Shown here: positions 8,605 to 38,102 of the stretch, one piece after another
Layout: every line of letters starts with the position of its first letter
Position numbering within the stretch: the first letter of the stretch is position 1
Assembly (NCBI GenBank): GCA_001179505.1
Contig: CDMY01000619.1
Location: 1-41,396 of the forward strand
Length of the DNA: 41,396 nt
Direction: 5' to 3'
DNA from: Vitrella brassicaformis CCMP3155
Lineage: Eukaryota; Protista; Chromerida
Position numbers and translations under genes: made by a program
Notes under the pieces: model-generated
What the model was told of the DNA's origin: nothing
The model's input: the letters and a program-made list of their open reading frames with translations, nothing else
Database searches by the model: none

Positions 8605-8858
8605 GATGTCGACGAAAGAGGGACAACGCCGATCTGGCACACCTGGCAAGGGTTTCACAAAGCACCCTAGGCGGCCAGAGCTGAGCGAGCTTAGAAGTTT
8701 CAAGCAGCCCGTTGCGTCCGCGCACATTCATGGGAAGCAGCATGCCGGCACGGTACGCCTTTCATCTCTGCTGTTCATCTTTGTGCAGCCTTCGTGTGTG
8801 TCCAAAGGCGGCCCTCTTCTGCACGTGATGACGTGATGGGCGTGATGGCATCCATCCC

Positions 8859-9411
8859 ATGACATCAGCTGCTACAAGCGGCCATGAGTGCCATGAGCAT
8901 GCTGCGAGTGTTGACCGTGGTTTGGAGGTGCGTCGGTCTCTCATCCGCGGCGCTGGAATGGGGCTCTTCGCTTCCAAGGCATTCAGACGGGGAGAGGTGC
9001 TCTGCGAATACACCGGCACTGTGCTCACTCTCAGGTGAGAGGGGGAACGAACCATGGGGCAAGGCCATCCATCCATCTCACACGGGGAGGGTCGATGGAT
9101 CTGTGTGCCTTGTGTGGTGCAGGCAGCTGCTGCAGCAGAGGGACCGGACTTATGTGATGGGCGGCTTCGGACTCAACGCCCACATCGACGCGGGACCACA
9201 CCCAGAGGTCTGACAGAAGAAGTGTGTGGCACACAACTGATGGTTGCCATAGTCCAAGTGTTTGGTTGGCTGGCTGCCTGGCTGCGTGGCTCTGCAGGTG
9301 TTGGCTCGTTATATCAATGACAACTTCGACAAGAGCAAGATCAACGTCAGATTCAACAAACTCAAGACCCTCAAGTAAGACCGCTCACCAGCCATGCACA
9401 GCTGGCCACTC

Positions 9412-9446
<35 letters not shown>

Positions 9447-9631
9447 GAGGGCCGAGGTGATAGCTCTGCGCGACATCGCGCCAGGAGAGGAACTCTACGC
9501 CAGCTACGGACAGGTAAACAGCTGCGCCAAACACACACACAGGTTGAATGAACATTGTGTGTGTGTGTGTGTAGGTGTACTGGCGCGGCTACGAGGCACG
9601 CCAGCAGGCCACGGCGGGCACTGCCAAGTGA
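8859..9631 (+). CDS. Minimal SET-domain protein, putative lysine methyltransferase (copy A), 5 exons, ~140 aa
   Basis: GLEVRRSLIRGAGMGLFASKAFRRGEVLCEYTG, HIDAGPHPEVLARYINDN, RAEVIALRDIAPGEELYASYGQVYW. All four introns are GT-AG and keep the frame. Confidence 0.92.
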
Positions 9632-10017
9632 CTGACCATTGGCCATGATGTGTGGTGGCCTGCTGCTGATGTGTTGCATGGAGGGTGCACAACGCACGAC
9701 GAGTACCTCTGTTGATAGAAGGGTCGGGGCACACTGCATGTGGCGTATGGAAAGAACTGTTCGTCGAACGCTGCCTGCTGTTGTACTGCTGCTTCCTGTG
9801 TCCATCCTGTTGGTCTCTGTCGGTCCATCTGCACACCGACATGTAGGCGAGTGTAACATTTCGCACGCACCTGGGTGCAGCACACCATACATCTGCAGAA
9901 GGGTGTGTCACTCGAGTGCATGCAAGGTGAACGTCAGGTGAGCTCGCTGGGGGCCAACACCGGGGGCTTGACGTCAGTCATCGCAGAACGACGCCTTTTG
10001 AGAGTTTTGTGAGGATC

Positions 10018-12025
10018 ATGGCCAGTGCACCCGACCCCATTGCCACGCAGTCGGCTTCGGCCACCACCACCAGAGACAGGGAGGGGAACCGACGAGTCCC
10101 GCTGCAGACCTTCCTCCGAGAGAATATGATGCTCATCCTCCTGGGAGCCTTCGCGGCGCGTAAGCCAGAAGAAAAGACGGCTGACCATGCTCGCTTCTCG
10201 ATGAGTGATGTTCTTCTTCCCCATCACACGTCTGCAGTGACCGACTGGTTCTCCTTCTTGGAGATGCTGATTGACGAACCGTCCGAGTACACCGTGCCCC
10301 CTCAGTGCAAGACCCTCCTGCTCGCGTCTGCCTTCATCTCCACCACCCTGCTCGTCCTCAGGTGGTGGCTCGAGTATCAGCTAGTGAACGCTACTATGGT
10401 ATGATTGCGGCCAAGATCAATCACGTCTCTCGGGGCGATTGGTCTCATGTGGTGTCTCAGGTGAAGCGCGTGAAACGGCCGTCGAGAGACATCGAAATGG
10501 GCGAGCACACAGTGCACTCTCGCCTCATCCAGCCCGGCGTAGCATCACAGGCCTCTACACCCCGAGGGCCCTCTGTCAAGGCACCCGAGATACCCCGCTT
10601 CCACCGGCCCGATCCGCCTCAGTGGCTCGTCAGCATGACCCCTTTCTTGGGCAGCATCTCGGTCTGCAATGACAGCATCGACTTGATCAACGTCGTTGTC
10701 ATTCTGCGGACCAATCCAGGAGCCAGCACTATGGGGACACTCATCTGCAATCTCTTTCTGGATCTCCTCAATGCCGTCGCCTCGGCCTATGAGGCCATGG
10801 GCTTCGAAGCCTCGCAGCAGCAGCTGGCGCAGGAGACAGAAACTCTCAGGCTGCGAGGAGACGCACGGGAAATTTCGAAGCTCCCCCAGATGCTCGCTGG
10901 TCCCTGTTTTATGGGAGCGATCAGTGCGGTGTTGGCTGTTTGGTTCCCTGCGCTTTCTTGGCTGTTTTCTTTCTTGTTCTGGTTCCTCGGCGTTTTCTTG
11001 CCGGTGGTGGGTATCATCGGTATCATTCACGGGTCAATCCAATACTATCACCCTGGCAAGATCTTCGTCGACTACAGCAGATTGGGCCTCCTCCACCTCC
11101 TGATTGCCGAGCTTGTCGATGCGACGACTGACTGGATCACATGGTTCACGATCGCGATGGCCAGCGAGAGGGTCCCCACATGGCTTTGGCGGCTCTACCT
11201 TCTTTCCCCTTTGACAGGAGGCCTCATGCTTTATCCTTGCCTGGTCGCAATGCTTGAAGCCAAAATCGATGCCAAGGCCCACCAACAGACGATAGGAAAT
11301 CGTCTTGCCAACCTAATCTGTGAGGATCTTCTGGGCCTGGTGTGTAACATCTTCTTCCTCTGCTATCCCACTTACCAGCTGCAACTGCTCCCCATTGCCA
11401 ACATCATCCTTACGCTGGCGGTCATTACCTGTCAGCTGATTACAGAAATCAAGGGGCTGCTTCATGCCGAAAAGCTTTTGGCAGAGACTCTGGATGAGAG
11501 ACACATCGAGGAGCTTCTGAATGATGGAGCGGATCCAAACATGGCGTGCGGTGAACCACTTCGGCGCGCCCTGATGATCAAGGCAGCGGAAAAAACAATA
11601 ACGACCGCATATTCAAAATCGTTGAGCTGCTGTTGGAAGCCGGAGCAGACCCGAATCTCTACAAGACTCAGGCAGGGGGCTTGGCTATAGCACCTTTGGA
11701 TTTAGCGGTGACAAAATGGCGAACAGAAAATATTCAACCAGGCTCACGAAGTATTTGCGTCTGACTTCAGGCACTGCAGCCCGAGCTGAACGATGTCGCC
11801 GCCCTCCTCGCAGCCAATAAGGCTAAGCACTCCAAGGATTGGCACAAATACGGCGGCCGCACCGACCGGAAAGCCTATGCTGCCATTGTGATGCGGTCGA
11901 ATGCCCTGCAAGAGAAGAAAGATCGCAACTTCCGCGAAGCGCACCATCAAGAGGTCGACAATGCAGAGAAAGCGTTGAAGGCCGACCTGAAGGCCCTTGC
12001 TGATGCAGCTAGGCGAAGGAATTAG
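10018..12025 (+). pseudogene. Multi-pass membrane protein with C-terminal ankyrin-like repeats (copy A), apparently frameshifted at ~11590
   Basis: Exon 1 starts MASAPDP, followed by an intron at ~10400-10460 and a long hydrophobic exon 2. The ankyrin-like text (FKIVELLLEAGADPN...APLDLA|ALQPELNDVAALLAANKAK) is out of frame after the A6 run at 11590-11595, and the upstream frame stops at 11690. Could be an assembly error. Confidence 0.7.
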
Positions 12026-13119
12026 ACCGGGTATGTGTGCATCATGCAAATCAAACATGTGTCTCGTGGGGACGATCCCTTTGTGCGTCTTGTGCTGTCT
12101 CTGTGCAGGCCCACTGAAGGCCCACTGAGTGCAGCCCTTCGGATGAAAGCCTTCACACACGACGTGACTATGCATGAATCAGTCAGCTGAATGGGACACT
12201 CAACAATACCTCCAACGATACCTGAAGACGACGAGTTGATTGATTCAGTTTCGCATCTGTTCGCCGTCCAGATAATACTTTCCATGTGCACACACCACAT
12301 GAAGGCAGAGTGCTGTCACACGAAGGAAGAATCACATCTTGCAAGATACCACCACACCACCCCCACACCCCCACACACACAGCAGCCTTCGATCGATCAA
12401 GTGAGACACATCGATGGTCACTGCGGAGGACAAGACAGCCACAGATCTTCTCTCCCACTAGCGCCCCCCACTACACCCCTATATATCCACTTGTATCGCC
12501 ACACACACACATATGCACACCCCTGCGCTATGTCAGTCACTACTCAATCGTTCACTACAGACGAGTCTGTCTCGTCAAATCTACCCAAAGCCCGCTCCCT
12601 TGCCACGTATCTGCCTCTATTGCCCTCTATTGCCCGCTTGCCACAGACCTGAGCGGCAAAATGCCACAGCGACATAGCACGTTTCATGTCTCAGGCTCGC
12701 CAGGTCACATCACCACCGACAAGAGCACACACACGCGCAAGCGAACAAACGGAGGACAGAAAGAGGGAGATAGGCAGAGAGACGGAGGCGGGACTCAAGT
12801 ACAGATTGACTTTCAATTGTCCTCTAGGCGCATGGGCCGTCAAGGGGCGAATGGAGGCACTTGGCACGGCTGTAGCCAACGATCTCAAAGCGCAGCTCCA
12901 ATTTCGGCTTCATCGGGCTGTCGAAGAGTGTCTCGATCTGCTGCAGGCTCGTCGCCGTATTCCGCCATGTCGTCCTACATACTTTCGATTTGCCTCTTGA
13001 CCATGTCCTCGATATACTTCAGAGTGAAAGTCCCGGCCCCCACATTATGTCGGCGGCAATCGCAGTGGCCGCCGTATCGTAGTCACCCTCATCGATCATC
13101 TCACCTGCCTATACACACA

Positions 13120-13167
<48 letters not shown>

Positions 13168-13241
13168 CATCCTCGATGTGTCCGTCGCCCGCTCGTTTAC
13201 TCACCCCAGAGCACTTTGCCTGGGATCGCCTGCTGCTCCTG

Positions 13242-13558
13242 TCAAGCGCTTCGTGCCTCTTTGATCTCGTTCTTCACCATGGTCTTCCACCACGGGCCGC
13301 AACCTCCTCGGCTCGGCCCACGGCCGACCTTGCTGCACTGGCTCCGTCCACCCACCGCCGTCATGACGATTTGCAGTTGGCGATGCTCCTCGCTCTCTGA
13401 ACCGCCACTCAGGCCAGACGGGGCCTGATGAGAAATGCGACAGACAACAGACACACAGTGTAGAGATGCAACGCATTTGATGCCCCGGACCGCTTTCTGC
13501 TTACCGATGACACGGCACACACAATGAGGCCGAGGGCCAACAGAATAAGCCTTGACAT
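13242..13558 (-). CDS. Small putative secreted protein, probably degenerating
   Basis: Signal-peptide-like exon MSRLILLALGLIVCAVSS with a gtaagc donor at 13504. Acceptor at 13425 leads to APSGLSGGSESEEHRQLQ. The downstream frame disagrees with the duplicated copy; a further exon-like segment lies near 13110-12830. Confidence 0.35.
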
Positions 13559-13739
13559 GGTGATCTGCCAGCGGTGTGGATCGGAAACGACGAAGCATGA
13601 TGGGATGGATACAGAGGGCTGACGCAAGGAGGCCTTGAAGAATGCGGAAGGGGGAGCAGCTGCGAGCTCATATGCTCAGATGCCAATTGGCGCAGGTAGA
13701 TCGCCGAACCGCGCAGATCTGGCAGCCTTTCGCTGAGCC

Positions 13740-15480
13740 ATGCCTCCCCTCCATGCTGTCCTGCCTCTTTTGGCTCTGATCTCTATCTGCAGCACGTGCA
13801 ATGCGTCAGACATACCCCATCGGGTGGTGCATGGCGATGGCTTTCAGGACTGTGCGGCCGCCATCAACTTGAAGAACTGGACGGGACTACCCAGCTATGA
13901 CAACTACAGGTGCGAAGCGCATCTGTGTGCTTGAGTGGACGCATGCGTGTGTGTGTGCGTTGCAGGTCGTGCATTTCAGCGTCCAGTGCCGACGTGTCGA
14001 CCAAGTACTGCCTGGGTGAGCTCACGGCGCTTGGCGGCGTGGCGGGACTCACTGCGGGGCTGTGTCTGCCGGACCACTGCACACAGGCGAGAGGGCGTCG
14101 GTGGGCGGTGGGGTGCAATTGTGACGCATGTGTCCATTCATGTGTGTCGCAGAGTAACATCGAGGAGTTCGTGGCGCTGGTGTGTGCGGTTCCCTCGTGT
14201 GTCGACATCGAGCAGACACTGCAGCCCCTCTGCGACGCCGTGCAGGCAACCATGTGCGACCCCAGGAACCGGTCAGTCAGTGTGCACACCTCATATAATA
14301 CACACATGCATCCAACTACCTTAAGCATGGATTGCTGGTGCTACTGTGTGTGTGTGTGTGTGTGTGTGTGTCTGTGTGTGTGTGGTCAGGACGTCGTCCG
14401 CACACAACTTTCACCTGTCGTGTCTGGAGTCGGACAGTCCGTCGAGCAGCAAGGGCGAGATGCTCGACGCCACGCTGGCGTGCGGCGGCATAGACCCACA
14501 GAGGACACTCGACAGCGGCCTCATCAACAACCTCGGCAACTGGGATGCTTGCAACGACGTTAGTGACCGAGATGGGAGAAGGGGGCGGGAAGGGGAAGCT
14601 CGTCTCTCATTCTCTGTATGTGTCTGGGGGGGATTGTGCGTGCAGCTGCCGGGCGCTCGCTACTGCCTGGCGTCCTACGCTCAGATCTTCATCACGTCTG
14701 GGCAGTGTGTGGCGTCCACGTGCGGTGTGGACAAGTACCAGCAGATGGTGTCCTTCGCCTGTGAGGTCGACAACTGCATGGCCGTCACCAACCTCATCAA
14801 CCCGGAATACTGCGCTTTCTGGTACACATACCCACCCCCATGCCCATCCATCCATCCATCCATCGGTGTCTTGCACGCCATATGCAGGAAAACGGTGTAC
14901 TGCGGTGCAAGGGGTAAGCAAGTGATCCTTGCAGGCGGCCCCAACGACCTCCCCGTGCCGACAGAGATCGATCTGGACGTCACATGCGACTACAGCGCCC
15001 CTAAACCAGAGACCGGCACATACGTCACCCTGGCCATCTGCGGCGTCATTGCGGTGCTCATCACGGCTGCAACGGTGCTGTCAGAGGTCAGACGCAGGCG
15101 TGCTGAGGGGTTGCAGGGTGTGAGTGTTGAGTTGGTGGGCAAGGACGGTGGTGGCGAGGGCAGGCGAGTGGCCCCCCGTGGTCGTGCTCCTGTGTGGGAG
15201 CGGCTGCTGCTGGCCTTCTCGCTCACAGACAACTGGCACAAGATGCTCAGCACACACAGGGTACCCACCCACACACACACACACTCGGTTCATCAATCCA
15301 TCTGCTTGTGTGTGTGTGTGTGTTTGTGTGTGTGTGTGCGTATTGGTCAGAGTGGTGATGCCGTCTGTTGTCTGGACGGGCTGCGGTCTCTGTCGATCTT
15401 GTGGGTGCTGCTGGGCCACACCTTCCTCATGGCGGGCGCGGCCGTCCCTCTCACCAACCTCACGGTAGCACACTCACACA

Positions 15481-15515
<35 letters not shown>

Positions 15516-17935
15516 GAGGAGAGAGCCACTCATGGACACGTCTGCTGCGTGTTGTGTTTTCTGCTGCTGCAGGATACCATCCAAGTTGGTCAGTCAGCGC
15601 TTCTGCAGTACACGCATCTGCATCAACGGAGCTCTCTCTCTCTCTCTGTCGTTCAGTTGGCCGTTTCAGCTTCCAGCTGGTGGTGGGGGCCTTCTTTGCC
15701 GTCGACACCTTCTTCTTCCTCTCGGGATTCCTCCTAGCCTACGTCGCCGTCAAACACGCCACGCGGATGAAGACGCGCGTCAATGTGCCCGTCGCAATCA
15801 TACACCGGTATGTGTGTGTATACGATGACACACACGCACACACATATAAAGTCTTGTGGATGAATGGATGGATGGATGGATGTGTGTGTGTGTGGTCAGG
15901 TGGGTGCGTCTGAGCGTGTTGTACGTGTTTGTCATTCTGGCGTGGGAGTACCTGACGCCCTACATGGGCAACGGCCCCCGATGGCCGCAGTTCACAGTCC
16001 AACTGCACTCCACTTTCCTCTCGGTCAGTAAGTACACACATGTCCCACACACAACACACACACACACCGGAGGATGGACCCACAGGTGCGTGTGTGTGTG
16101 TGTGTGTGTTGCAGAGGGGTAAGGAGAGCGCTTGCAAGAGATACTGGTGCGTATCCAGAGAGGGGATGGATGTGTGGTGTGCGTCGCCGTGTTTCAGTGC
16201 CGTGTGCGGTGTGTGTGTGCTGAGTGTTTCGTGTGCAGGTGGGCGAACCTGCTTTACATCAATAACTTCATCCCTCACCTCTACGGCGCCCAGTGCAGTA
16301 AGCCAAGCCCCCACACCCACCCCAATTACCTACAGGTCTTATAAGTGTGTCTGTTGTGTGTTGTGCAGTGCCTTGGACGTGGTACCTCGCCAACGACATG
16401 CAGTTCTTCGTTGTGGGCATTCTCATCATCGCCATATACTGCGGGTCGTCCACCCCCCCCCCCCCCCCCCNNNNNNNNNNNNNNNNNNNNNNNNNNNNNN
16501 NNNNNNNNNNNNNNNNNNNNNNNNNNNNNNNNNNNNNNNNNNNNNNNNNNNNNNNNNNNNNNNNNNNNNNNNNNNNNNNNNNNNNNNNNNNNNNNNNNNN
16601 NNNNNNNNNNNNNNNNNNNNNNNNNNNNNNNNNNNNNNNNNNNNNNNNNNNNNNNNNNNNNNNNNNNNNNNNNNNNNNNNNNNNNNNNNNNNNNNNNNNN
16701 NNNNNNNNNNNNNNNNNNNNNNNNNNNNNNNNNNNNNNNNNNNNNNNNNNNNNNNNNNNNNNNNNNNNNNCCCCCCCCCCCCCCCACACACACACACACA
16801 TTGCGTGTTTGTCGGCTGGCTGGTCTACAGGTACTCGAAGCGCCTCAGCTGGTGCTGCATGGGCCTTCTCCTCGTTGCCAGCTGGGTCACCACAGGCTCC
16901 CTGAACCTCATCCACGGGTGGAAGGTGGCCGTGATGCCCATGATCCTGGAGCCAGGCCAGCACCAGGAGTATCTTTATTATGAGAAGCCTTGGTGCAGAA
17001 TCGGGCCATACCTCGTCGGCATGGTCAGCTATCAACCAACAGACAGACACACCGTCCTTGCACCCATTTCTCCCCCTCTCTCTCTGTGGTTGTCAGGCCG
17101 GCGGCCTCTTGGTGCTTGAGCACGGGAGAGCTGTTCGCGTGTTTCTCGCCGGGATGACCCGCTTCGGCCGGTGGGCGTGCCATCTGCTGTGTGGTGCTGT
17201 GATGCTCTTCGTCATCTTCATCCAATATGACGCCAACAAGGCCGGCGCCGTCCCGTGGACCCCCCTGGAGACCATGCTCTATAACACGTTCGCGCGTTCT
17301 GTGTGGGGGCTGTGTCTGCTGTGGCTGGTGGTGTGCTGCGCCGCGGACAAGGACGGCGTGTATGCGCCCTGGACCAACCGGCTGCTGTCTTTGCCCGTGT
17401 TTGTGCCGCTGGCCCGGCTGACCTATGCGTTCTACATGATCCATTTGCCGCTCATGGCCGTCTGGTTCTTCTCGAGGCGAGATCAGGATTACTACTATGA
17501 CGGTGACACAGGCTCCCTTGCTATCCCTCCCTTTTGACCAAATGCGATGCGTGTGTGTGTGATGTACAGGTCTGATGGCCGTGTACTACCCGGCCTTCAT
17601 GGTGCTGGGCTTCGCCATAGCGACCTTCTGCTTTCTCTTCGTGGAGGCGCCCGGCATGAACATCGACAAGATTGTCCTCGACAGACTCATGACACCCTCC
17701 ACCACACAGGCCACTACGCAACCAAGCCCCGATTCTTACGAAGGTGTGTGTGGTGTGGAGGAAACATGACACAACAGCCGAAGACACACACACACATCCA
17801 TCCGTGTGTGTGTGTGTGTGTGTGTGTGCAGGGAAGGAAGGCTTCGGGTGTCCGCACTTTGAGAGCGGCGAGAGCATCAGCACGGCCATCCCGACCCCCG
17901 AGCGATCTGACGTGGCGCTTCTTGCCACCAAATGA
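13740..17935 (+). CDS. O-acyltransferase (acyltransferase-3; NRF-6/OacA-like) with Cys-rich N-terminal domains
   Basis: Signal peptide MPPLHAVLPLLALISIC. Motifs LDGLRSLSILWVLLGHT, FAVDTFFFLSGFLLAY, IHR(W)VRL, WYLANDMQFF, YYEKPWCRIGPYLVG, PLARLTYAFYMIH and FLFVEAPGMNIDK. Confidence 0.92.
16471..16770. other. Assembly gap (300 N) between poly-C tracts, inside an intron
   Basis: The N run is flanked by C homopolymers. The flanking exons join in frame (IIAIYCG|YSKRLSW), so no exon need be missing. Confidence 0.9.
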
Positions 17936-19682
17936 CCTGACGCAACCAGGCAATATTGTATGTGTGTGAGTGTCTGGGTGTCTGAGTGTGTTCTGTGCTG
18001 TCCTGTGGCGTGCTGTGCTGCGTGCATCTGGCTGTGTCTGTGTGTGTGGGCGGCCACCGGTTTTGCTGCCGTGCGGCCACAGAGAGAGAGCGCGGGGGAG
18101 AGTCGGGGAACATCGCGGGGGAGTGTTGGATGCGATACCTCGTTCGCTTCTCTCACTCCGTCTCGGAAACGCATAATCAATCGTGAGTGACCTGACGCAT
18201 TCATATCTGTCTAGGACGGAGGGGAGGGGAGGGAGGGAAGCACTCGGAAGATGAGCTATCATGCTGTTTTTCACCTCACGCTGTGTAAGCGTTGTCCGCC
18301 TGGTGGACAACCAACAGGTCGATAAGGCGGCCGATCGGGAACGTTCTGTGGGTGTGGTGTTTTTGTTTGAGCAACGCGCAGGGGGTGGGGGGAGGGGGCA
18401 TTTTTCGATTTTTCCAACTCTTCCCTCGTCAGTCGGAGAGCTTGAGGTGTGGTTAGTTGGCTGGTTGGTGGTGTGGGTGGCTGGGCCAATTCGTGTGCAT
18501 GCGATGCGTTGGTTCATGCATTGCCCAAATTCTGTGAGTATTCGTTCGTGTGGTGTACCTACTTGCATTGATTGATCACTGCATCCGATCGCTGGGTGGG
18601 CGGGGCGGGCGGGTTTAAGGCCGAGAGAGCTGACGGCATTGCGAGCATGAGAGAGCTGAGAGAGTGAATGAGCTGAGGTCTGTCTGTGTATCTGTCTGTC
18701 TGTCTATCTGTCTCTTTGTCGCCAGTGTCGGACGCCTTCGGGTGAAGCGCATCTGGGGCGACTGACACACCGTGGATCAGATATACGCCTCTGTCTGTCT
18801 ATGTCTATGTCTATGATGCGAGGACGACCGATGCGTCCACGCGTTCATCCCTCCATCAGATTTATCTTCCTGCCTCCGTCTGTCTTCGGTATGCCTCTTT
18901 GTCTGTCCAAGTGTGTGTGTACCTTTTTTCAGCTGGCTGGTGTGCGGCAGGGCGGGAGCTCTGCTCTGCAGGCAACACACGATCACAATCACAATCACAC
19001 AAACACTCTCGTCAGGAGAGAGCACAGCACGTCAGTGTGTACGTAACGCGACGTCTCGGGGCTATTTGTCCACTCGTTCGTTCCATAACAGACAAACGAA
19101 GCGGCTGCATGTCAGTCAGTCATGTCACGTGAGCGAATGAGAGCGCGTGGGGGGATACTATCCGTGTGTGTGTGTGCGTGTGTGTGGTGAGAGTGAGAAG
19201 GGGGCTGCGACTCCATCTAGACACATGGTCACCCACCAGTACACTTTTTTGGACTCTCTCTTGACGGACGGCTTCATCGTATCTATCAAGTCATCCCACG
19301 AATTCTATCACCCCGGTCCAAACACTGTACACGTGCAGCCAGCGATCAGCCTTTGCCAAGGGCCTTCCAAAGCACACCCGCCACCGGCACCTCACCTCAC
19401 ACTACAGGCGTCTCTGTGGTGCTCGAGGAGTTGCCAGCGACAACTACACTGGAGGATGACCTTTGGCAGGGAGAAAGGATGGCGCACTGAGCGATAGAAG
19501 GACGGAAACACGCACTCAAATCGACTACCTGCCTGCCTGCTTCATTGCTCGAACCACACAACCCCGCCACTTCAGACATCAGCCAGCAAAAATTTCCTCT
19601 TTTCATCTTTGTTTGCCTCGACTGGACAGCGCATCCTGATCGAATGAGGCACGTGCTTCTCCCATCCGCGTGCCTTTATGCC

Positions 19683-20579
19683 TTAGTAAGGGCTGACCAC
19701 CTGCACACACAAGAACAAGCAACGCTCCATTTATCTATCTCTCCGGCCATTCCCAGCCTGTGTGCCTGTCTGTGTGTGTGGCATAGGTCCACGGTACCTA
19801 CCTTGAGTTGTGGTGCGAGTCGTGTGAAGAGGATGTCGCCGTACTGGCCAAAGAGGACGTCCTGCACGATCAGCCCCACGATGGCCATCATCGCCAGCCG
19901 CCCGTTGTTGAGCTCCCTCGTCTGGTACCCCACCCACTGCTCGGGCGTCACGCCGCTGTCCGTCACGGGGAAGTCGTCAATGCCGTCCGCCCGTCGGGTG
20001 CTCACGATGTCCTGGTACCACCCGTAGGTCCCCAGGTAGTCGCCCGGCAGGTCCATGCGGCCGGGGGTCTCCCGCTGGTACTTCTTGACCAAGTTCATCG
20101 TCACGTACTCGAAGAAACCGATGAAGAAGAGCAGCTGGATGATGCCTGGCGCGGGGACCTCCGTGATGGCCTTGAGAGGGTCGGCGCTCAGCTTGCCGCC
20201 ATAGAGGGGGTGGAAGACCGTCTGTGTCATCCACCCCAGGACGGCGAACATCGCCAGGCGGCCATGCTTGAGCTCACACTCGCGCAGACGGGCGATCTCC
20301 TGCGTGCTCTTGTTCTTGGTGAAGCCAAGGGGGTCGAAAAATCCGAGAGGCGCTGAGGATCCGATCAGCGGGTAGCCGGGGGCGACCTCCAGACCATTGG
20401 GAGCAGTGATGCCGCACTCTGCGGGCGTGAGGGTGGTCTTGGCGTCCAGCCGAGTGGGTGGGGTGCGCAGGATGTTGCCTCGGACTGCGGGAGGGACGAA
20501 GGCGGTGTCTGCCGCAGCGCTGAGGCCGACACAGAGGCCCACCATCACGGCACCGATAACAGACCTCATCTTTGCCAGA
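19683..20579 (-). CDS. Light-harvesting chlorophyll a/c-binding protein (LHC/FCP family), plastid-targeted
   Basis: Motifs APLGFFDPLGF, RECELKHGRLAMFAVLG and YQTRELNNGRLAMMAIVG. Signal peptide followed by AFVPP (Phe-led transit peptide). One intron (19701-19801) precedes a final VVSPY*. Confidence 0.96.
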
Positions 20580-28976: not shown

Positions 28977-29855
28977 ATCAGATCGTAGCCATGTCAATAA
29001 GTATCGACTAATTAGGTATGCACACACACACACACACAGACAGATACAGAAAATTGAATGCGCGGAATCCCGTCGCTCTCCTTATCTGCTGTGTGCAGCC
29101 TTTGATTAGCACACACATTGATGGACGGCGGTGGAGAGGGATGGAGGAAGGGACAAGCAGTGGCGTAGAATGGGGTTTGGGGTTGCTTAACGGGGCAAGG
29201 GCAATTCAGGTGCACGTGTGTGGGTGGGTGGATGGATGGATGGCAGTGTTTTTCCATCCATCGGGCCTTGCCATGTCGTGTGCATCGTGCTTGCGTGGGG
29301 GACGGTCTGTTGGTCTGTCAGGGGAAGCCCAGACAGACAGACGACACGACCATGGCCGGCTCCCAGACGCCCATGTTAGACCGCAGATAAGACCGAGCAC
29401 AAGATCAACGTGAGCTTTCAATCAAGGGGTCGTAGCCATGGTGTGTCCGTCTCAGTACTCACTGTACCTGCACATACCGATAAACGCGGCCATGATGGAT
29501 GTACCACCGCACACACGCGTCTCGCCTAGTCAGTGGCCGCCTAGTCACCTCACCCCCACCACCATGCGTCTCTCCCTCTTCTGCCCATTCATCCAGCCAT
29601 CCATCCATCCATCAATCCATCCGTCCACCCATGAGGCAGTGAGTCAGTCGTACGCCTCATGCTCACTCCCGTAGACCGTGTCAGAGGTGTGCCGCCCGCC
29701 GATCCCAGCACCCATCCCCACACCCAGACCTCCACCGCCATCGTCTCGATGCACATGGTGACGCGCTGCATCATCACACATCACACACACACACAGAGCA
29801 CACATTTCGTGTGTGCATGTCACCATGCCAACCTTTCCATCCACCACCTGCCCAT

Positions 29856-31391
29856 TTACTGACCCCTCAGTTCTCGTTCGAATTCGTTGTGGCCGGACTC
29901 CTCCCCGCCACCCATCACGCCACCCATGGTCTCCTGCGGCTCATCGTCGTAGTAGTGCTGCCCCCTCTGCTGGTACTGGCGGTGCTGGCCGCCGCCGAGT
30001 CGCCCGCGGCGGGATGCTGACGAGTAGGAGGCCGTCCGGCTGAGCAGCTCCTCCATCTGGTCCTGCATCCATCGACCCACCGACACACATTGATCGCATC
30101 ATACCGTCGTGAGGGGGGAGGGGGGAGGGGGATGCTCACGGACGGACTCACTCGGTCAAATCTGGAGTCGTGCTTCATTCTGGTGCTGGTGCGCTGGTTC
30201 TGCACCTTGAAGTACTGGAAGACAAACACCGCCACCACTGCTATCAACAAGCTGACACACATGCACACACAGACAGACGGACGGACGGGATGCACAGATG
30301 GAATATGCGCGGCCCTCTCTGCGTGGCTAGCGTGTCGTGTGTGCTGTGCTGTGCGTCACACACACACACATGGGGATTCTGAGGTTGGTGAACCACGGCG
30401 AGAGGTCCGTCTGGGGCGGGGGCGGCGTCAGCACCACCTCATACACAACCACACTCGTCGCTGCACACACACACCGACACACACGCACACACACACACCG
30501 ACACACACCTGTGCATCCACCAGCTCACAAGCGACGTGACGCACCGTTAGTCTGCATGGCGACCACGTCGATCTGGCCGGGCTTGCGGAAGCCGACGAAA
30601 TTGAGCACCTGATCGATAGACAGTCGGCTGGATGAGTGCCAGGGAGGAAGAAAAGTCATATATCAATGTGTCACCTGCTGTCTGATGGTCTTCCTGAAGG
30701 TGACGCCATGTGCGCCTGATCTTGACTCGGCCGCAGACGTGTTGAAGGCGATCAGAGAGGCCTGCAAACAAACACACACACACGACACACACGTTGGTGG
30801 ATGGATGGATGTGACAAGTCTTGGAGCCGACAAAAGGGCGGAAAGACTGCCTTATGCCGGACTATGAGCCTGTCTGCCTGTCATGGCTTCTCTCTGTGGG
30901 CAGCCAGGTAGGCCTGTCTCAGTGAGGGCCGGGGGTTTGCAGGACGCACACCCACAAAACGGCCCGACCCAGTCAAGAAATGGCACAGCCAGCCGACTGG
31001 TCACTCAGACACTGCCCATATACCCTCTCTCTCTCTGTGTCTGTGTGTCTGCTCACGGGTTGTGCGGTGGTGGCTGAGGCGCTGGTGGTGTCAGGCTGAG
31101 CGAATGCGAGAGTGTACCCACGCATAGCGAACAGCTGCAACGGCCGCGACGACACCTGGGGGTACTTGAACTCAACTGACAGAGACAACGACACACGTGC
31201 AAACAAGCGGCACCTAGGTGTGCACGTCAGGCCCTTCCTTCTCTCTCTCTCTCTCCCATGTATCGCTGACCGAGGCATGCCTTCCCTTTGGTTTCGAAAG
31301 CGAGCACCGATCCGTCCTCCAGGCTCACAATGGGGCGGGACGGGTGAGTCACGTCGAGCACCATATCGTGGATGGGGGATGACAGCTGACA

Positions 31392-31425
<34 letters not shown>

Positions 31426-33173
31426 AAAGATGCACAGATCCAACATGTCTTCATCTGTACGCCCCACTCACCCCAGGGTTGCATGGCGGCGCATTGGAGT
31501 CGAGCATGGCCGGCGAGAAGGGTCCGAACATGGTGTGTGTGCGGAAGAAGAGCGTGTTGGTGTGGCCAGCGAGGCCCGTGACGCCCCCCTCCTCCTCAGT
31601 CACCCTCACGCGGCCCTTGAAGGTCGTGTTGCGCATCAGGACACTCACGCCGCCCTCACGGTCGCCTATCACGATGTAGCGCACGCCACTGAGAAAAGGA
31701 AGCACACCCATCGATGCGACCATCCGTCTGTGTGGGTGTGGGTCGTTCCGTCACCGATTTTGGTAGCAGGCGAGTGCGGTTGAGTTGCGAAGGCCGTCAG
31801 ACACTGACGGGGGCCACTGAGAAGCAGGGAGGGAGGGAGGGTGCATGGTGAGGTTGGGCTATCTTCGCCTGTTTTTTGTTTCTGTCTGACCTCTCCTTTG
31901 ACATCGAATTTCAGTGTGACATTGAGCATCGGCCCCATACTGAGAGATATCCTCTCATCGTGGGAACTCTTGCGACCTGTATTGCATGCGCAGCACAGAT
32001 GTCCGCCCACAGAGAGGAGAGAACGAGAGTGGCGTGTGCATGCCTTCTGTGAGTTGTGGTTCGGTGTGTGTCTGATACCCCACCTTTCTTCTCCTCTCTG
32101 GACAGCTTGATGTGTCTGATCCTGATGGCGTACACGAGCACCTCACCCCCCTCACCCAATGCCACCAAATGCTGATCTGCACACACACACACACACACAC
32201 ACGCAGGACAGACAGACAGACCATACCGTCCGCCAATCCATGTGTCTGTTCTCTCTCTCTTTGACGCTTTGACGTGGTACCTTCAATGGAGGTCGACACG
32301 GCCACGTGTCTGATTGGCTGTGAGGGCTCCATCTGTGTGTATGCCGTCAGCTCGCCGCCATGGATGTAGACGCCCACATGGCCCTCGCGCGACACGCACA
32401 CCAACAACGAGGTGGGGACGCCCCCAGGGGCTGAGGACACACACACCCGCACACACACAGGTGATTGGTCAGCCGAGAGTGTGATGTGCTGGCGCGTCTG
32501 TCACGTCCGTACATACTTGTGTCGGTTTTGGGCCCCGCTGTTGGCGGCCTGGCCGAGCGCACCGGGATGAACCGGATGAAGTCTACCGTGAAGTTGGCCT
32601 GCATGCACAGAGGGGTGTCCTCAGACACACAGATTCGTGTGTATGGTGCACATGTACCTGTATGGCGGCTCGTTCGATCATGTGATCCTCAGCTGAGCGA
32701 CTCGGCGCATGGGCGTCGTCGAAGCTAATCTGGCGCACACACACACACACGTGTGCGCACATGGCCCATCCCGTCCACCTCTCCGCCCACCTGACTGACT
32801 CCTCACCTCTGCCAGCAGAGGGACCTTGTCTTGCAGCAACCGTCGGTACGCAGCAGGCAGGGCCACCCTGCACACACGGGAAGCATCACATCCATCAATC
32901 AATCCGTCTGGCTGTCCATGTCTGGGTTGCTGTGGCTTACGGTTCTCCTGCAAGCAGTGCCGTCCTCATTTTCTCCAGGAGTCCCCTCTTTCTCTCGTGC
33001 AGCTCGATGAGCGTCTCCACTTCACGCAGCTCCTGGCTGAGCAGATCCATCGCAGCACTGCCTTCGCCACGGCCATCGATGTCATCCGATGCACCTCCGG
33101 ACGAGCCAGCAGCTGCTCTCAAGGCGCCGCTTATGGCATGCAGGCAAACCAGTGAGAGGAAGGGAGATTTCAT
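29856..33173 (-). CDS. Hypothetical type-I membrane protein (signal peptide, coiled coil, beta-rich WD40-like region, C-terminal TM segment and tail)
   Basis: Leader MKSPFLSLVCLHAISGALRAAA. Exons include LLVCVSREGHVGVYIHGG, HLVALGEGGEVLVY, YIVIGDREGGVSVL and IVSLEDGSVLAF. A hydrophobic AVAVFVFQYF segment precedes a Gly/Gln/Arg tail; stop at 29856. Some junctions near 30400-30900 are unresolved. Confidence 0.65.
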
Positions 33174-33511
33174 GATTCGAGCATGGGATGTGCAGGGTAA
33201 GGGTTGTTGGGGTTCAGGGTTGTTTGGAGTAAATTTAAGTGTCGAATCAAGCTGCACGATGCACTGGATAGATCGACATGCAGCAAACCGCAGCGGTATT
33301 ACACGACGAAACAAAGGAGCTAGAGAGCAGCACCATTACGTCAGATCAGCAGCAGACAGTCAAAGAAACCCATTTCCCGCATGCACTCACGCATCGTGAA
33401 GTCAAGCACACGCAGCAGATGGCCATAGACGACATTGGCTTGCGCCCAGTGTCAGTACCGAATGTTGCATCTCTGTAATGTGTGTCTGTTGTCTGTCGCA
33501 TTTCTCATCAG

Positions 33512-33900
33512 GCTTCGTCTGGCCTGCGATTCGGTTCAGAGAGCGAGGAGCATCGCCAACTGCAAAGCAGTACTACTGGAGGACAGCGCCTTGACGGCGG
33601 TGGGTGGACGGAGCCAGTGCAGCAAGGAGGAGAGCTTCAATTTGAGGCTGCCTGCAGCGCGGCCCGCGAGTACTGCAGAGACCGTGGCGTAGACGAGGAG
33701 GCAAAAGACGCAGAGGTGAAGTAGGTGAGGTGAGTGAGCCCGGGGGCGATGGACACATCTCTCTCTCTCTCTCTCTGTGTGTCTGTGTGTGTGTGTATGC
33801 AGATGAGATGATTGACGAGCGTGATTACTACACGGCGGCCACTGCTACTACGACGGACACAATGGGGGATGGGGACTTTCACGCTGCGTATCCGTCTCAT
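33512..33900 (+). pseudogene. 5'-truncated remnant of the small secreted gene of copy A
   Basis: Keeps the acceptor tttctcatcag (33511) and SESEEHRQLQ, but homology ends within intron 1, so the signal-peptide exon is absent. There is a 19-nt length difference versus copy A after ctgcaaa. Confidence 0.55.
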
Positions 33901-34751
33901 AACGTGAAAGTCATACTTTGGAATGCGTGGAAAACTGAGACCCAACTGACGCTTGACTCCGTTCTTCCCTCTTGCCGCCCCCTCTGTGCGTCGTCCGTCC
34001 GTTTTGTGTTCATGCGCTTGTCTCTGTGTGTGAAGATGTCGATTTTGCCAGTGAAGTAGCTGGAGTGGGGAGAGGGAAGGCGGGATGAGACGAGTGCTGC
34101 TCACTAATGGCGTGCCTGCGTTGGCTTGTTTGGTTCTTGTCGGTGTGGTGATGTAACCTGGCGAGCCTGAGCCATGAGACGTGCCATGTCGCTGTGGCAT
34201 TTTGCCGCTCAGGTCTGTAGCAAGCGGGCAATAGAGAGCAATAGAGGCAGATACGTGGCAAGGTAGCGGGCTTTTGGGTAGATTTGACGAGACAGACTCG
34301 TCTGTAGTGCATATGTGTGTGTGCGGCGATACAAGTGGATATATAGGGGTGTAGTGGGGGGCGCTTGTGGGAGAGAAGATCTGTGGCTGTCTTAACCTCC
34401 GCAGTGACCATCGATGTGTCTCACTTGATCGGTCGAATGCTGGTGTGTGTGGAGGGTGGTGTGGTTGTCTCTTACAAGATGTGATTCTTCCTTCGTGTGA
34501 CAGCACACTGCCTTCATGTGGACAGCGAACAAATGCGAAACTGAATCAATCAACTCGTCGTCTTCAGGTATCGTTGGAGGTATTGTTGAGTGTCGCATTC
34601 AGCTGACTGATTCATGCATAGTCACGTCATGGCCGTGAAGGCTTTCAACCAAAAGGGCTGCACTCAGTGGGCCTGCATGGGGAGAGACAGCACAAGACGC
34701 ACCAAGTGATCGTCCGCGAGAGACATGTCTGACTTGACACACATACCCGGT

Positions 34752-36798
34752 CTAATTCCTTCGCCTGGCCGCATCAGCAAGGGCCTTCAGGTCAGCCTTC
34801 AATGCTTTCTCTTCATCGTCGAGCTCTTTGTCAAAAAAATCGAAGTCGTAGTGAATATCTTTCTTCCATTGCAAGGCATTCGACCGCATTACAATGGCAG
34901 TGTAGGCTTTCGGGTTGGTGTTGCCGCCGTATCTGTGGTAATCCTTCGAGTGCTTAGCTCCGTTGGCTGCGAGAAGGGCTGCGACATCTTTCAGCTCGAG
35001 CTGCAATGCCTGCCCAGACGCACACACTTGTCAACATGCGTGAGCATTTTCTGTTTGCCTTTCGTCACCGCTAAATCCAAAGGGGCTACAGCCAAGCCCC
35101 CTGCCTGAGTCTTGCAGACATTGGGGTCTGCTCCGGCTTCCAACAGCAGCTCAACGAATTTGAATATGCGGAGAGCATCTCTATCGTTCCGCACCAAGCG
35201 GTCATCGGCGTGTTGGGAGGCTGCCTTGATCATCAATACGCACCGAAGTGGTTCACCGCACGCCATGTTTGGATCCGCTCCATCATTCGAAAACCACTCC
35301 AGCCCTTTATCAGTTAAATTCCTGAGGCGGTCCTGTCCTAGCATTTTGGCATGCTCCAGCCCCTTGGTTTCTGTAATCAGCTGACAGGTAATGACCGCCA
35401 GGGTGAGGATGATGTTGGCAATGGGGAGCAGCTGCAGCTGGTAAGTGGGATAGAAGAGGAAGAAGAAGTTACACACCAGGCCCAGAAGGTCCTCACAGAT
35501 TAGGTTGAGAAGGCGATTCAATATCGTCATCTCATAGGTCTTGGCATCGATTTTGGCTTCAAGCATTGCGACAAGGCAAGGATAAAGCATGAGGCTTCCT
35601 GTCAAGGGGGAGAGAAGGTAGAGACGCCAGAGCCATGTGGGGACCCTCTCGCTGGCCATCGCGATCGTGAACCATGTGATCCAGTCAGTCGTCGCATCGA
35701 CAAGCTCGGCAATCAGGACGTGTAGGAGACCCAACCTGCTGTAGTCGACGAGAATCTTGCCAAGGTGATAATTTGAAGCGTCGGGAAACAAACTCAAGGA
35801 TACCAGCACCACCGGCAACACAACGCCGAGGAGCCAGAACAAGACAGAAAACAGCCAAGAAAGCGGCGCAGGGAACCAAACAGCAAACACCGCACTGATC
35901 GCTCCCATACCACAGGAGGTAGCGAAGGATTGTGGAAGCGCTTTCATCAGATGTGCGTTTCTTTGCACCCTGAGAGTGTCTGTCTCCTGCGCCAGCTGCT
36001 GCTGCGAGGCTTCGAAGCCCATGGCCTCATAGGCTGAGGCGACGGCATTGAGGAGATCCAGAAAGAGATTGCAGATGAGTGTCCCCATAGTGCTGGCTCC
36101 TGGATTGGTCCGCAGGATAATGACGACGTTGATCAAGTCGATGCTGTCATTGCAGACCGAGATGCTGCCCAAAAAAGTGGTCATGCTCACCAGCCACTGA
36201 GGCGGCTCGGGTCGGTAGAAGCGGGGTATCTCGGGTGCTTTGGTAGACGGCCCTCGAGGTGTAGAGGCCTGTGATGGTACGCCAGGCTGAATGAGGCGAG
36301 AGTGCACTGTGTGCTCGCCCATTTCGATGTCTCTCGAGGGCCGCTTCATTCGCTTCACCTAAGACACCGCATGACACCAATTGCCCAGAGAGACGTGATT
36401 GATCTTGGCCGCAATCATACCATAGTAGCGTTGACTTGCAGATACTCCAGCCACCACCTGAGGACCAGCAGGGTGGTGGAGATGAAGGCAGACGCGAGCA
36501 GGAGGGTCTTGCACTGAGGGGGCACGGTGTACTCGGACGGCTCGTCAATCAGCATCTCCAAGAAGGAGAACCAGTCAGTCACTGCAGACGTGTAATGGGG
36601 GAGAAGAGCATCACTCATCGAGAAGGGAGAATGGTCAGCCGTCTGCCCTTTTGCCTTACGCGCCGCGAAGGCTCCCAGGAGGATGAGCATCATATTCTCT
36701 CGGAGGAAGGTTTGCAGCGGGACTCGTCGGTTCCCTTCACTATCTCTGGCAGTGGCCGAAGCCTCACTCGTGGCAACGGGGTCGGGTGCACTGGCCAT
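34752..36798 (-). CDS. Multi-pass membrane protein with C-terminal ankyrin-like repeats (copy B, intact), 3 exons
   Basis: Exon 1 MASAPDPVAT...NATM, a long exon 2 with ~6-7 hydrophobic segments and NDGADPN / FVELLLEAGADPN / APLDLA, an intron gtgacg...ggcag, and a last exon ALQLELKDVAALLAANGAK...ARRRN*. Confidence 0.85.
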
Positions 36799-37165
36799 GT
36801 TCCTCACCAAATTCTCGCGTCGTTCTGCGATGAACTGACGTCAAGCCCCAGCGATCTCACTTTGCATGCACTCGAGTGACACACCCTTCTTGCACTGCCA
36901 GATGTATGGTGTGCTGCACACAGGTGCGTGCGTAATGTTACACTCGCCTGCATGTCGGTCTGCAGATGGACCGACAGGACAGACCGACAGGATGGACACA
37001 GGAAGCAGCAGTACGACAGCAGGCAGCGTTCGACGAACAGTCATTTCCACGCGCCACATGCAGTGTGCCCCGACCCCTCTATCAACAGAGGTGCTTGTCT
37101 CGGGTGTTGCGCACCCTCCACGCAACACATCAACAGCAGCCCACCACATCATGGCCAATGGTCAG

Positions 37166-37901
37166 TCACTTGGCAGTGCCCGCCGTGGCCTGCTGGCGTG
37201 CCTCGTAGCCGCGCCAGTACACCTACACACACACACAGTGTTCATTCAACCTGTGTGTGTGTATGGCGCTGTTGTTCACCTGTCCGTAGCTGGCGTAGAG
37301 CTCCTCTCCTGGCTCGATGGCGCGAAGAGCTATCACCTCGGCCCTCCTGCACACACACACACACATAGAGAGGCCAGCTGTGCATGACTGGTGAGCGGTC
37401 TCACTTGAGCGTCTTGAGTTTGTTGAATCTGACGTTTATCTTGCTCTTGTCGAAGTTGTCATTGATGTAGCGAGCCAACACCTGCAGAGCCACGCAGCCA
37501 ACCAGCCCCTTGGACCACGGCGACCATGAGTTGTGTGCCACACACACTCCTTCTGTCAGACCTCTGGGTGTGGTCCCGCGTCGATGTGGGCGTTGAGTCC
37601 GAAGCCGCCCATCACATAAGTCCGGTCCCTCTGCTGCAGCAGCTGCCTGCACCACACGTAAGGCACACACATTCATCACCCTCCCCATGTGAGAGGATGG
37701 ATTTTTCTTGCCCAATTATTCCCCCTCTCACCTGAGAGTGAGGACAGTGCCGCTGTACTCGCAGAGCACCTCTCCCCGTCTGAATGCCTTGCAAGCGAAC
37801 AGCCCCATTCCAGCGCCGCCGATGAGAGACCGACGCACCTCCAAACCACAGTCGACACTTCGAGGATATTCATCGCCACAGCCGGCCGCATCAGATGCCA
37901 T
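37166..37901 (-). CDS. Minimal SET-domain protein (copy B, intact)
   Basis: GLEVRRSLIGGAGMGLFACKAFRRGEVLCEYSG, VLARYINDNFDKSKINVRFN, RAEVIALRAIEPGEELYASYGQVYW. Same four introns as copy A; an alternative ATG lies at 37910. Confidence 0.92.
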
Positions 37902-38102
37902 GCAATTCATGCCATCACGTCACCACTGCCCGTGGCCAAGCAGTGCAGAGGAGGGCCGCGTTTGGACACACGAAAGCTGCACAAAGATGAACAGCAGAGA
38001 TGAAAGGTGTACCATTTCAGTGCCTTTGCGGTGCTGCTCACTACCGAATGTGCCTGGGTGCCTTCTCTGAGCTGAAGCATCTAAGCTCGCAGATCTTCCA
38101 GC

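What the first reader, a model, noticed from the sequence alone, without database searches (positions are those of the whole stretch)
8685..38090. ~4.7 kb inverted duplication carrying a SET + membrane-ankyrin cassette and bracketing ~20 kb of unrelated genes
8685-13472 and 33465-38090 are reverse complements (roughly 85-90% identity by eye) with the same gene order and introns. They flank the acyltransferase, LHC, two AP2-like, U-box and membrane-protein genes like giant inverted repeats. Recombination between them would invert the enclosed block. I found no transposase and no target-site duplication. The unit may be a dispersed or mobile cassette, or a one-off inverted duplication.
Basis: partly seen in the sequence, partly recalled or inferred. 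Interest (0 to 1): 0.8.

Follow-up and report, generated by a model that had tools for sequence, protein, structure and literature searches.

The report
One-off inverted gene-block duplication, Vitrella
In the alga Vitrella brassicaformis a 4.8-kb stretch carrying a small SET methyltransferase gene, a species-only membrane-protein gene and the stump of a third gene exists twice, as mirror-image copies 20 kb apart; this is a real but ordinary one-time DNA copying event, not a jumping element.

Summary
Window 8680-13472 and 33464-38095 are reverse complements, 89.5% identical over the 4-kb core and 85% overall. Gene order and all seven intron positions are the same. The window is a whole 41.4-kb scaffold of Vitrella brassicaformis CCMP3155.

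The assembly gap (16471-16770) lies inside one intron of an Acyl_transf_3 gene. The exons on either side are consecutive exons in two paralogs, so the join and the inverted orientation are supported.

Each arm carries three things:
- an intact 153-aa SET gene (dN/dS 0.30);
- a member of a roughly 17-copy, Vitrella-only family of multi-pass membrane proteins with a weak ankyrin-like tail;
- a decayed relic of a third, orphan gene.

The inner breakpoint falls in intron 1 of that third gene. Arm A keeps exon 1 and arm B lacks it, so arm A keeps the ancestral inner junction.

The whole unit occurs exactly twice in the genome. There are no terminal repeats, target-site duplication or transposase, so the mobile-cassette idea is not supported. 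Neutral divergence is about 13%, so these are not haplotypes.

Whether the 20-kb block was inverted at the same time (staggered-break model) or the copy was simply pasted in cannot be decided from this sequence. The scan has flagged other inverted duplications elsewhere in this genome. Interest is low to moderate.

The parts
8680..13472 (+). Arm A of the inverted duplication. It keeps the ancestral junction at its inner end.
33464..38095 (-). Arm B, the reverse complement of arm A. Its inner junction is novel.
8859..9631 (+). SET-domain gene, copy A. Five exons (8859-9034, 9123-9207, 9298-9374, 9447-9513, 9575-9631), 153 codons, intact.
   Evidence: Exons were read from the alignment and splice sites. 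Pfam SET matches exon 1 at profile positions 1-22 and exon 4 at 86-105. Exon 1 is closest to KMT5A/SETD8 in the PDB, weakly (E 0.011).
37166..37901 (-). SET-domain gene, copy B. Same five exons, intact; start, stop and all splice sites are conserved.
   Evidence: dS 0.18, dN 0.055, dN/dS 0.30; exons 2, 3 and 5 encode identical protein
9632..10017 (+). Conserved spacer between the SET stop and the membrane-gene start (8.2% divergence, below the neutral 13-14%).
10018..12025 (+). Membrane-protein gene, copy A (P0001). Exons 10018-10159, 10238-10398, 10461-11707, 11771-12025. A net 31-nt loss at about 11588-11604 shifts the frame before the ankyrin-like tail. The annotated product stops at 11687. 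The downstream frame stays open to the family's normal stop at 12023-12025.
34752..36798 (-). Membrane-protein gene, copy B (P0002, 615 aa), full length. Exons 36798-36660, 36581-36421, 36358-35069, 35009-34752.
   Evidence: Residues about 454-557 are ankyrin-like.
12026..12726 (.). Non-coding stretch 3' of the membrane gene, conserved between the arms (B: 34133-34751). Only 6.0% substitutions but ten indels. Significantly below the neutral level.
   Evidence: Fisher p 1e-4 against 4-fold sites, 2e-4 against introns
12590..13557 (-). Relic of a third, orphan gene in arm A. The signal-peptide-like exon 1 (13504-13557) lies just outside the arm. The body is broken by an in-frame TAG and by frame changes (12836-13111).
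33466..34271 (+). Relic of the same third gene in arm B. It is cut off at the 5' end exactly at the arm's inner boundary and lacks exon 1. It has lost and kept different internal pieces than copy A.
13473..33463 (.). 19,991-bp single-copy spacer. It holds the Acyl_transf_3 gene (about 15372-17537, +), an LHC gene (19676-20773, -) and other genes.
16471..16770 (.). Assembly gap with a C-run on both sides, inside one intron (about 16445-16830) of the Acyl_transf_3 gene. The flanks are continuous in order, strand and phase.
33452..33465 (+). 14-nt motif just outside arm B's inner end. It recurs (13 of 14) at 38038-38051, about 45 nt inside arm B's outer end. Marginal significance, unexplained.

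Best explanation
This is a one-time inverted segmental duplication in the nuclear genome of Vitrella brassicaformis. A 4.8-kb genic segment now lies twice, head-to-head, 20 kb apart. The segment held about 180 bp of SET upstream sequence, the SET gene, a membrane-protein gene and most of a third gene on the opposite strand. The inner breakpoint cut the third gene in intron 1, about 32 nt past exon 1. Copy B was therefore born without that gene's first exon, and arm A keeps the ancestral inner junction (shown). About 13% neutral divergence has accumulated since (shown). Both SET copies stayed intact under purifying selection. The two membrane-gene copies diverged mainly in segments that are hypervariable in the whole family. 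Copy A has a frameshift before its ankyrin-like tail. Both third-gene copies decayed in different ways (all shown). The event was DNA-level repair or replication, not transposition (inferred from copy number and ends). Whether the 20-kb block was inverted in the same event is unresolved. The arms could serve as a substrate for later inversion by homologous recombination, but nothing shows that this occurs.
For: Arms and limits. Two copies only: a whole-genome DNA search found arm A, arm B and nothing else covering the SET part or the non-coding parts, and SET exon 1 has only these two close matches. Each arm lies inside its own contig with kilobases of unique flank. The scaffold join is supported by a gene spanning the gap. 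Polarity: the C408 paralog of the third gene aligns with arm A up to 13560, which is 88 bp past the boundary and includes exon 1. Its alignment with arm B starts at 33466, at the boundary. Age and selection: 4-fold sites differ by 14.0% and introns by 12.6%. SET dN/dS is 0.30, with fewer non-synonymous changes than neutral (p 0.0012). The membrane gene has dN/dS 0.47, with patches near 1. A and B are sister copies with support 1.0. In no 90-nt window of the large exon is either copy closer to another paralog, so there is no sign of conversion from the arrays. No mobile-element features.
Against: Relative orientation and distance still rest on a short-read scaffold (Velvet k=75, SSPACE; PMC4501334). 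Four perfectly shared tracts of 80-108 bp exceed k, so local switches between the arms during assembly cannot be ruled out. Two non-coding parts (9632-10017 and 12026-12726) are less diverged than neutral sites. This could mean later gene conversion between the arms, in which case the duplication would be older than 13% suggests. A 14-nt direct repeat brackets most of arm B and is not explained by this account.
Confidence: 0.85

Rival explanations
1. Scar of a roughly 25-kb inversion made by staggered breaks. A pair of single-strand nicks 4.8 kb apart at one breakpoint was filled in. The segment between the nicks then ended up at both ends of the inverted block as inverted duplicates. This is the model proposed for most Drosophila inversions. 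It refines the origin of the duplication rather than denying it.
For: The architecture fits: ancestrally unique genic DNA duplicated in inverted orientation at both ends of a block, at about 85-90% identity. Ranz et al. report about 88% for such duplicates in 17 of 29 inversions (PMC1885836). One prediction is met: one arm (A) keeps the ancestral inner adjacency. Unchecked notes from this scan list other inverted duplications with 18-35-kb spacers in the same genome.
Against: The model also predicts that arm B keeps the ancestral outer junction and that sequence left of 8680 once adjoined the reverse complement of 33463. Neither can be tested without an outgroup or transcripts. No second short inverted duplication from the other breakpoint was found, although the Drosophila study also often lacks one. 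A staggered break of 4.8 kb requires long unwinding.
Confidence: 0.35
2. Mobile or dispersed cassette: the SET and membrane-gene unit is carried by a transposable element or moves as a unit.
For: The two genes travel together in both copies. The membrane gene belongs to an expanded family. A 14-nt direct repeat lies near both ends of arm B.
Against: There are exactly two copies of the unit. The other roughly 15 family members sit in tandem arrays; no copy of this SET gene lies elsewhere in the genome, and no third-gene homology was listed on those scaffolds. There are no terminal inverted or long terminal repeats. No transposase, integrase or reverse-transcriptase domain was found in arm ORFs. 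One end lies inside an intron of a neighbouring gene. The outer copy of the 14-mer lies about 45 nt inside the homology, not at its edge, and is only marginally significant (1 of 300 shuffles, six comparisons).
Confidence: 0.03
3. Assembly artefact: two haplotypes or strains of one locus mis-scaffolded as an inverted pair, or a wrongly oriented contig.
For: The assembly is a short-read scaffold with one gap between the arms.
Against: The arms differ by about 13% at neutral sites and by dozens of indels. They carry different deletions in the third gene. Each is embedded in unique sequence within one contig. The gap lies within one intron of a gene whose neighbouring exons are on the same strand and in the right order, as in two paralogs.
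Confidence: 0.04
4. Functional invertible segment: the arms are kept similar by recurrent exchange and flip the 20-kb block between two orientations.
For: The inverted orientation allows inversion by homologous recombination. Two non-coding tracts are less diverged than neutral sites, as recent exchange would produce.
Against: Overall divergence is 10-15% and the longest perfect tract is 108 bp, which makes a poor substrate. The low-divergence tracts carry many indels and could equally be constrained UTR or promoter sequence. No recombinase gene or site was seen. Only one orientation is present in the assembly.
Confidence: 0.04

Closest known systems
Inverted duplications at inversion breakpoints (staggered-break model; Ranz et al. 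2007, PLoS Biol 5:e152, PMC1885836)
   Same: Non-repetitive, gene-bearing DNA is duplicated in inverted orientation at the two ends of a block of tens of kilobases. The copies are about 88% identical and some duplicated genes decay. There are no transposable elements at the ends.
   Different: Here the inversion itself is not demonstrated, because no outgroup order is available. Only one breakpoint shows a duplication. The organism is a chromerid alga, where this has not been described as far as my literature searches went.
Low-copy repeats / segmental duplications in inverted orientation (substrates of non-allelic homologous recombination)
   Same: There are two copies of a few kilobases, embedded in unique sequence, carrying whole genes with introns, and able in principle to invert the intervening DNA.
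   Different: It is much shorter and more diverged than the repeats that drive recurrent inversions in mammals. No polymorphism data exist.
Composite or cargo-carrying DNA transposons
   Same: Inverted copies of one segment bracket unrelated genes.
   Different: There is no transposase, no terminal inverted repeats, no boundary target-site duplication, only two copies, and one end lies inside a neighbour's intron.

Membership tests
Inverted segmental duplication (low-copy repeat pair) | Two, and only two, long copies in the genome | tested here: met
   A whole-genome DNA search with arm A found only arm A and arm B for the SET, spacer and 3' parts. SET exon 1 has two close matches only.
Inverted segmental duplication (low-copy repeat pair) | Copies in opposite orientation on one molecule, each within unique flanks | tested here: met
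   One reverse-complement HSP. No flank homology. The scaffold join is backed by a gene spanning the gap. This is still a short-read scaffold.
Inversion-breakpoint duplication by staggered breaks | Inverted duplicates of ancestrally unique sequence at both ends of the block | tested here: met
Inversion-breakpoint duplication by staggered breaks | One copy keeps the ancestral inner junction and the other keeps the ancestral outer junction | tested here: inconclusive
   Arm A keeps the inner junction, because exon 1 of the third gene continues past 13472 as in the C408 paralog. Which arm has the ancestral outer junction cannot be told from the sequence.
Inversion-breakpoint duplication by staggered breaks | The enclosed block is inverted relative to the ancestral or outgroup order | not testable with these tools
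Transposable element / mobile cassette | Terminal inverted or long terminal repeats at the unit's ends | tested here: not met
   Only microsatellite matches were found inside each arm.
Transposable element / mobile cassette | Target-site duplication immediately flanking the unit | tested here: not met
   The only candidate is a 14-mer at 33452-33465 and 38038-38051. Its outer copy lies about 45 nt inside the homologous region, and it is marginal against shuffles.
Transposable element / mobile cassette | Transposase, integrase or reverse-transcriptase gene, and multiple dispersed copies | tested here: not met
   Arm ORFs gave only SET in Pfam. There are two copies.
SET-domain methyltransferase (Pfam PF00856) | Match to the SET profile at or above the curated cut-off, colinear over the exons | tested here: met
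   The exon 4 region scores 23.1-23.7 bits against a cut-off of 22.4, at profile positions 68-105 and 86-105. Exon 1 scores 18.4 bits at profile positions 1-22. The spliced protein was not searched as a whole.
Ankyrin-repeat protein (Pfam PF00023 and relatives) | Match to an ankyrin profile above the curated cut-off | tested here: not met
   P0001 and P0002 gave no Pfam hit. Paralogs P0003 and P0004 score 14-18 bits against a cut-off of 21.1. P0002 residues 454-521 match a designed repeat protein (8frf_A, 'RBL7_C2_3'; E 4.5e-6), and residues about 499-557 match consensus ankyrin and DARPin chains only at E 0.06-0.9. It is ankyrin-like, but membership is not established.

The most novel reading that the evidence does not exclude
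The pair is the breakpoint scar of a roughly 25-kb inversion made by staggered breaks. It would be one instance of a mechanism that has repeatedly reshuffled the Vitrella genome in 20-35-kb blocks while duplicating genes at the breakpoints. That would extend the Drosophila model to an alveolate alga and explain the other inverted duplications the scan has flagged in this genome.
Probability: 0.3. Interest if true: 0.45.

Novelty: new member of a known kind. Interest (0 to 1): 0.22.

Why it matters
On its own this is an ordinary structural feature, and it is now cleanly documented. It shows a dated duplication in which the fate of each gene can be read:
- the SET gene is kept twice under selection;
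- the family membrane gene is diverging at its variable segments;
- a truncated neighbour gene is dead in both copies.

It also shows which junction is ancestral. Its wider value depends on whether many such inverted pairs in Vitrella share a spacer scale and an origin. If they do, that would say something about how chromerid genomes rearrange and how lineage-specific gene families and duplicated chromatin enzymes arise. For annotation, it flags a probable frameshift in copy A of the membrane gene, two unannotated pseudogene relics, and a gap that is harmless.

Tried and rejected
1. Mobile cassette. I looked for terminal repeats, target-site duplications and transposase-like ORFs and found none. 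Copy number is two.

2. Haplotype or mis-join artefact. I rejected it on divergence, unique flanks and the gene spanning the gap.

3. Gene conversion from array paralogs as the cause of the low-identity patches. In a sliding-window comparison with 14 paralogs, A and B were always closest to each other. The patches coincide with segments that are hypervariable in the whole family.

4. Faster decay of copy A after its frameshift. Polarised changes show no significant excess in A.

5. A second short inverted duplication from the other breakpoint, as the staggered model allows. None was found.

6. SET or membrane genes next to the C408 paralog of the third gene. None was found.

7. Rfam and tRNA scans of the window found nothing.

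8. A genome-wide U-box search listed no match on this scaffold. The AP2 list was truncated.

10. Spliced gene models were never searched as joined proteins. Exons were searched one by one, by reference, and dN/dS was summed exon by exon.

11. The large representative-protein search and structure prediction were not used, because the family scans settled what mattered for this finding.


Full report
**Source and context**

The window is the whole scaffold C619 (41,396 bp) of a 72.7-Mb, 1064-scaffold assembly. Protein hits name the organism as Vitrella brassicaformis CCMP3155. This matches the published assembly, which was built from Illumina reads with Velvet k=75, SSPACE scaffolding and REAPR checks (PMC4501334). 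The scaffold consists of two contigs, 1-16470 and 16771-41396. Arm A lies entirely in the first contig and arm B entirely in the second.

**Gap test (done first, as asked)**

- The N run at 16471-16770 has a C-run on both edges.
- Upstream exons on the + strand match Pfam Acyl_transf_3 at profile positions 4-37 and 41-76. A downstream exon matches positions 211-294.
- The exon ending at about 16444 and the exon starting at 16831 are the same two exons that are immediate neighbours in two paralogs of this gene. In loci L021 (C677) and L022 (C656) they are separated by introns of only about 67-88 nt.
- The phase fits: two bases of a codon lie before the gap and one after it.

The gap therefore lies inside one intron, nothing coding is missing, and the two contigs are joined in the right order and orientation. 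The inverted orientation of the arms depends on this join, so the test matters.

**The observation**

- There are 21 colinear inverted blocks and a single gapped HSP, 8661-13472 against 38113-33464.
- The global alignment shows weak but real homology from about 8680/38095 and strong homology from 8756/38009.
- The inner end is sharp at 13472/33464.
- Identity is 89.5% over 8756-12726 and 85.1% over the whole arm. The longest perfect tracts are 108, 89, 88 and 80 bp.
- Outside the arms nothing is shared.

**Content of each arm**

*(i) SET gene.* It has five exons and 153 codons, read from splice sites that are conserved in both arms. Pfam SET matches exon 1 at profile positions 1-22 and exon 4 at 86-105, the latter above the curated cut-off. 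Exon 1 is weakly closest to KMT5A/SETD8 among solved structures. Both copies are intact. dS is 0.18, dN 0.055 and dN/dS 0.30, with a deficit of non-synonymous changes (p 0.0012). Most amino-acid changes fall in the first 20 residues.

*(ii) Membrane-protein gene.* It follows a 386-bp spacer and has four exons; the public models are P0001 and P0002.
- The word search of 5.8 billion proteins returned only Vitrella proteins.
- Pfam gives nothing above threshold.
- Residues about 454-557 of P0002 look ankyrin-like by comparison with PDB sequences.
- A language-model look-alike, XK-related proteins at 0.85, is only a lead.
- In arm A a net 31-nt loss next to an A-run at about 11588-11604 shifts the frame just before the ankyrin-like tail. 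The annotated product therefore ends early at 11687, although the shifted frame stays open to the family's usual stop.
- Polarised substitutions show no significant extra decay in copy A. The shift is therefore recent, tolerated or a base-call error.

Its family has members on C408, C98, C240, C395 and C689 and no Pfam domain. In arm A it is broken by an in-frame TAG and frame changes. The two arms have kept and lost different internal pieces relative to the C408 paralog. This explains the patchy identity of the inner 750 bp.

**Polarity**

The C408 paralog aligns with arm A up to 13560. That is 88 bp beyond the arm boundary and includes a signal-peptide-like exon 1 with its splice donor (13504-13557). 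Its alignment with arm B begins at 33466, exactly at the boundary, and the sequence left of it is unrelated. The inner breakpoint therefore lies about 32 nt into intron 1 of the third gene. Arm A keeps the ancestral inner junction, and arm B's inner junction is new.

**Copy number and relatives**

- Arm A as a DNA query finds only itself and arm B over the SET gene, the spacer and the 3' non-coding part.
- SET exon 1 has no other close match, and the other SET-domain loci of the genome are unrelated genes.
- The membrane gene has about 15 further relatives at about 52-59% protein identity (roughly 70% in DNA). They lie in tandem arrays on C280 (three clusters, both orientations), C351 and C109.
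- In a tree of the large exon, A and B form a clade with support 1.0 on a long branch.
- In no 90-nt window is either copy closer to another paralog. The low-identity patches coincide with segments that are hypervariable across the family.
- dN/dS for the membrane gene is 0.47 overall and near 1 in those patches.

**Age and heterogeneity**

| Class of site | Divergence between arms |
|---|---|
| Four-fold degenerate sites | 14.0% |
| Introns | 12.6% |
| SET-to-membrane spacer (9632-10017) | 8.2% (p 0.018) |
| 3' non-coding stretch (12026-12726) | 6.0% (p 1e-4) |

The 3' stretch shows few substitutions despite ten indels. Either these tracts are constrained as promoter or UTR sequence, or they were homogenised later by exchange between the arms. 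I cannot separate the two. No Rfam family or tRNA lies in the window.

**Mobile-element test**

- No terminal inverted or direct repeats other than microsatellites were found.
- No transposase-like domain was found.
- There are two copies only, and one end lies inside a neighbour's intron.
- The one oddity is a 14-nt direct repeat at 33452-33465 and 38038-38051 that brackets most of arm B. It beats all but 1 of 300 shuffles in one of six comparisons. Its outer copy lies about 45 nt inside the homologous region, so it is not a boundary target-site duplication. I leave it unexplained.

**Mechanism**

The data show a single DNA-level duplication with arm A ancestral at its inner end. Two origins remain open.

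1. *Copy-and-paste.* A copy of the segment was inserted, inverted, 20 kb away, by template switching or break repair.
2. *Staggered-break inversion.* A roughly 25-kb inversion with a 4.8-kb stagger at one breakpoint left the staggered segment at both ends. This is the model proposed for 17 of 29 Drosophila inversions, where duplicates are about 88% identical (PMC1885836).

The second model predicts that arm B keeps the ancestral outer junction and that the sequence left of 8680 once adjoined the reverse complement of 33463. Testing this needs an outgroup or transcripts, which the tools could not supply. I was led to this model by earlier notes of this scan that describe other inverted duplications with 18-35-kb spacers on other scaffolds of the same genome. 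Those notes are unchecked and count only as leads.

**Comparison with the known, and verdict**

The structure is a member of a well-known kind, an inverted segmental duplication. It resembles inversion-breakpoint duplications and fails every test for a transposable element. This particular case is not described in the literature I could search. Its one-off-duplication reading is supported and its mobile-cassette reading is not. Interest is low to moderate: a clean example, possibly part of a genome-wide pattern worth a dedicated survey.

Noticed in passing
G000:C280:42000-48200 (+), 97400-101700 (-), 122100-134600 (+); C351:93900-100500 (-); C109:1-2241: A Vitrella-only family of about 17 genes for multi-pass membrane proteins with a weak ankyrin-like tail. 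They are arranged in tandem arrays of about 2.2-kb units. Members on different scaffolds interleave in the tree, and some segments are hypervariable across the family.
   Followed up: partly
window 11588-11604: Copy A of the membrane gene has a net 31-nt loss next to an A-run, which shifts the frame before the ankyrin-like tail. The public model P0001 reads into the wrong frame and stops at 11687, yet the shifted frame stays open to the normal stop. It may be a real recent frameshift or a base-call error.
   Followed up: partly
window 12590-13557 (-) and 33466-34271 (+); paralog at G000:C408:65917-67419: Two unrecognised pseudogene relics of an orphan gene family with a signal-peptide-like first exon. 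Other members lie on C408, C98, C240 (several), C395 and C689. No Pfam domain.
   Followed up: partly
window 12026-12726 and 34133-34751: A non-coding stretch 3' of the membrane gene is only 6% diverged between the arms, against about 13% at neutral sites, yet it carries ten indels. It could be constrained UTR or a later exchange tract.
   Followed up: partly
window 33452-33465 and 38038-38051: A 14-nt direct repeat (13 of 14 identical) brackets most of arm B, marginally above chance. It is not at the outer homology boundary and is unexplained.
   Followed up: yes
window 8091-8642 (-): The left neighbour of arm A, head-to-head with the SET gene, has an Rv2258c-like winged-HTH domain (HTH_65, E 1.3e-7). 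I know this domain as the N-terminal part of a class of SAM-dependent methyltransferases.
   Followed up: no
window 9404-9447, 9548-9575, 12082-12109 and the matching sites in arm B: Several introns end in a (TG)n run directly before the CAG acceptor, and (CA)n/(GA)n runs fill other introns. The assembly gap itself sits in a C-run followed by (CA)n.
   Followed up: no
The largest ORFs gave no Pfam match, and the genome-wide U-box search listed no site on this scaffold. The AP2 list was truncated, so that label stays open.
   Followed up: partly
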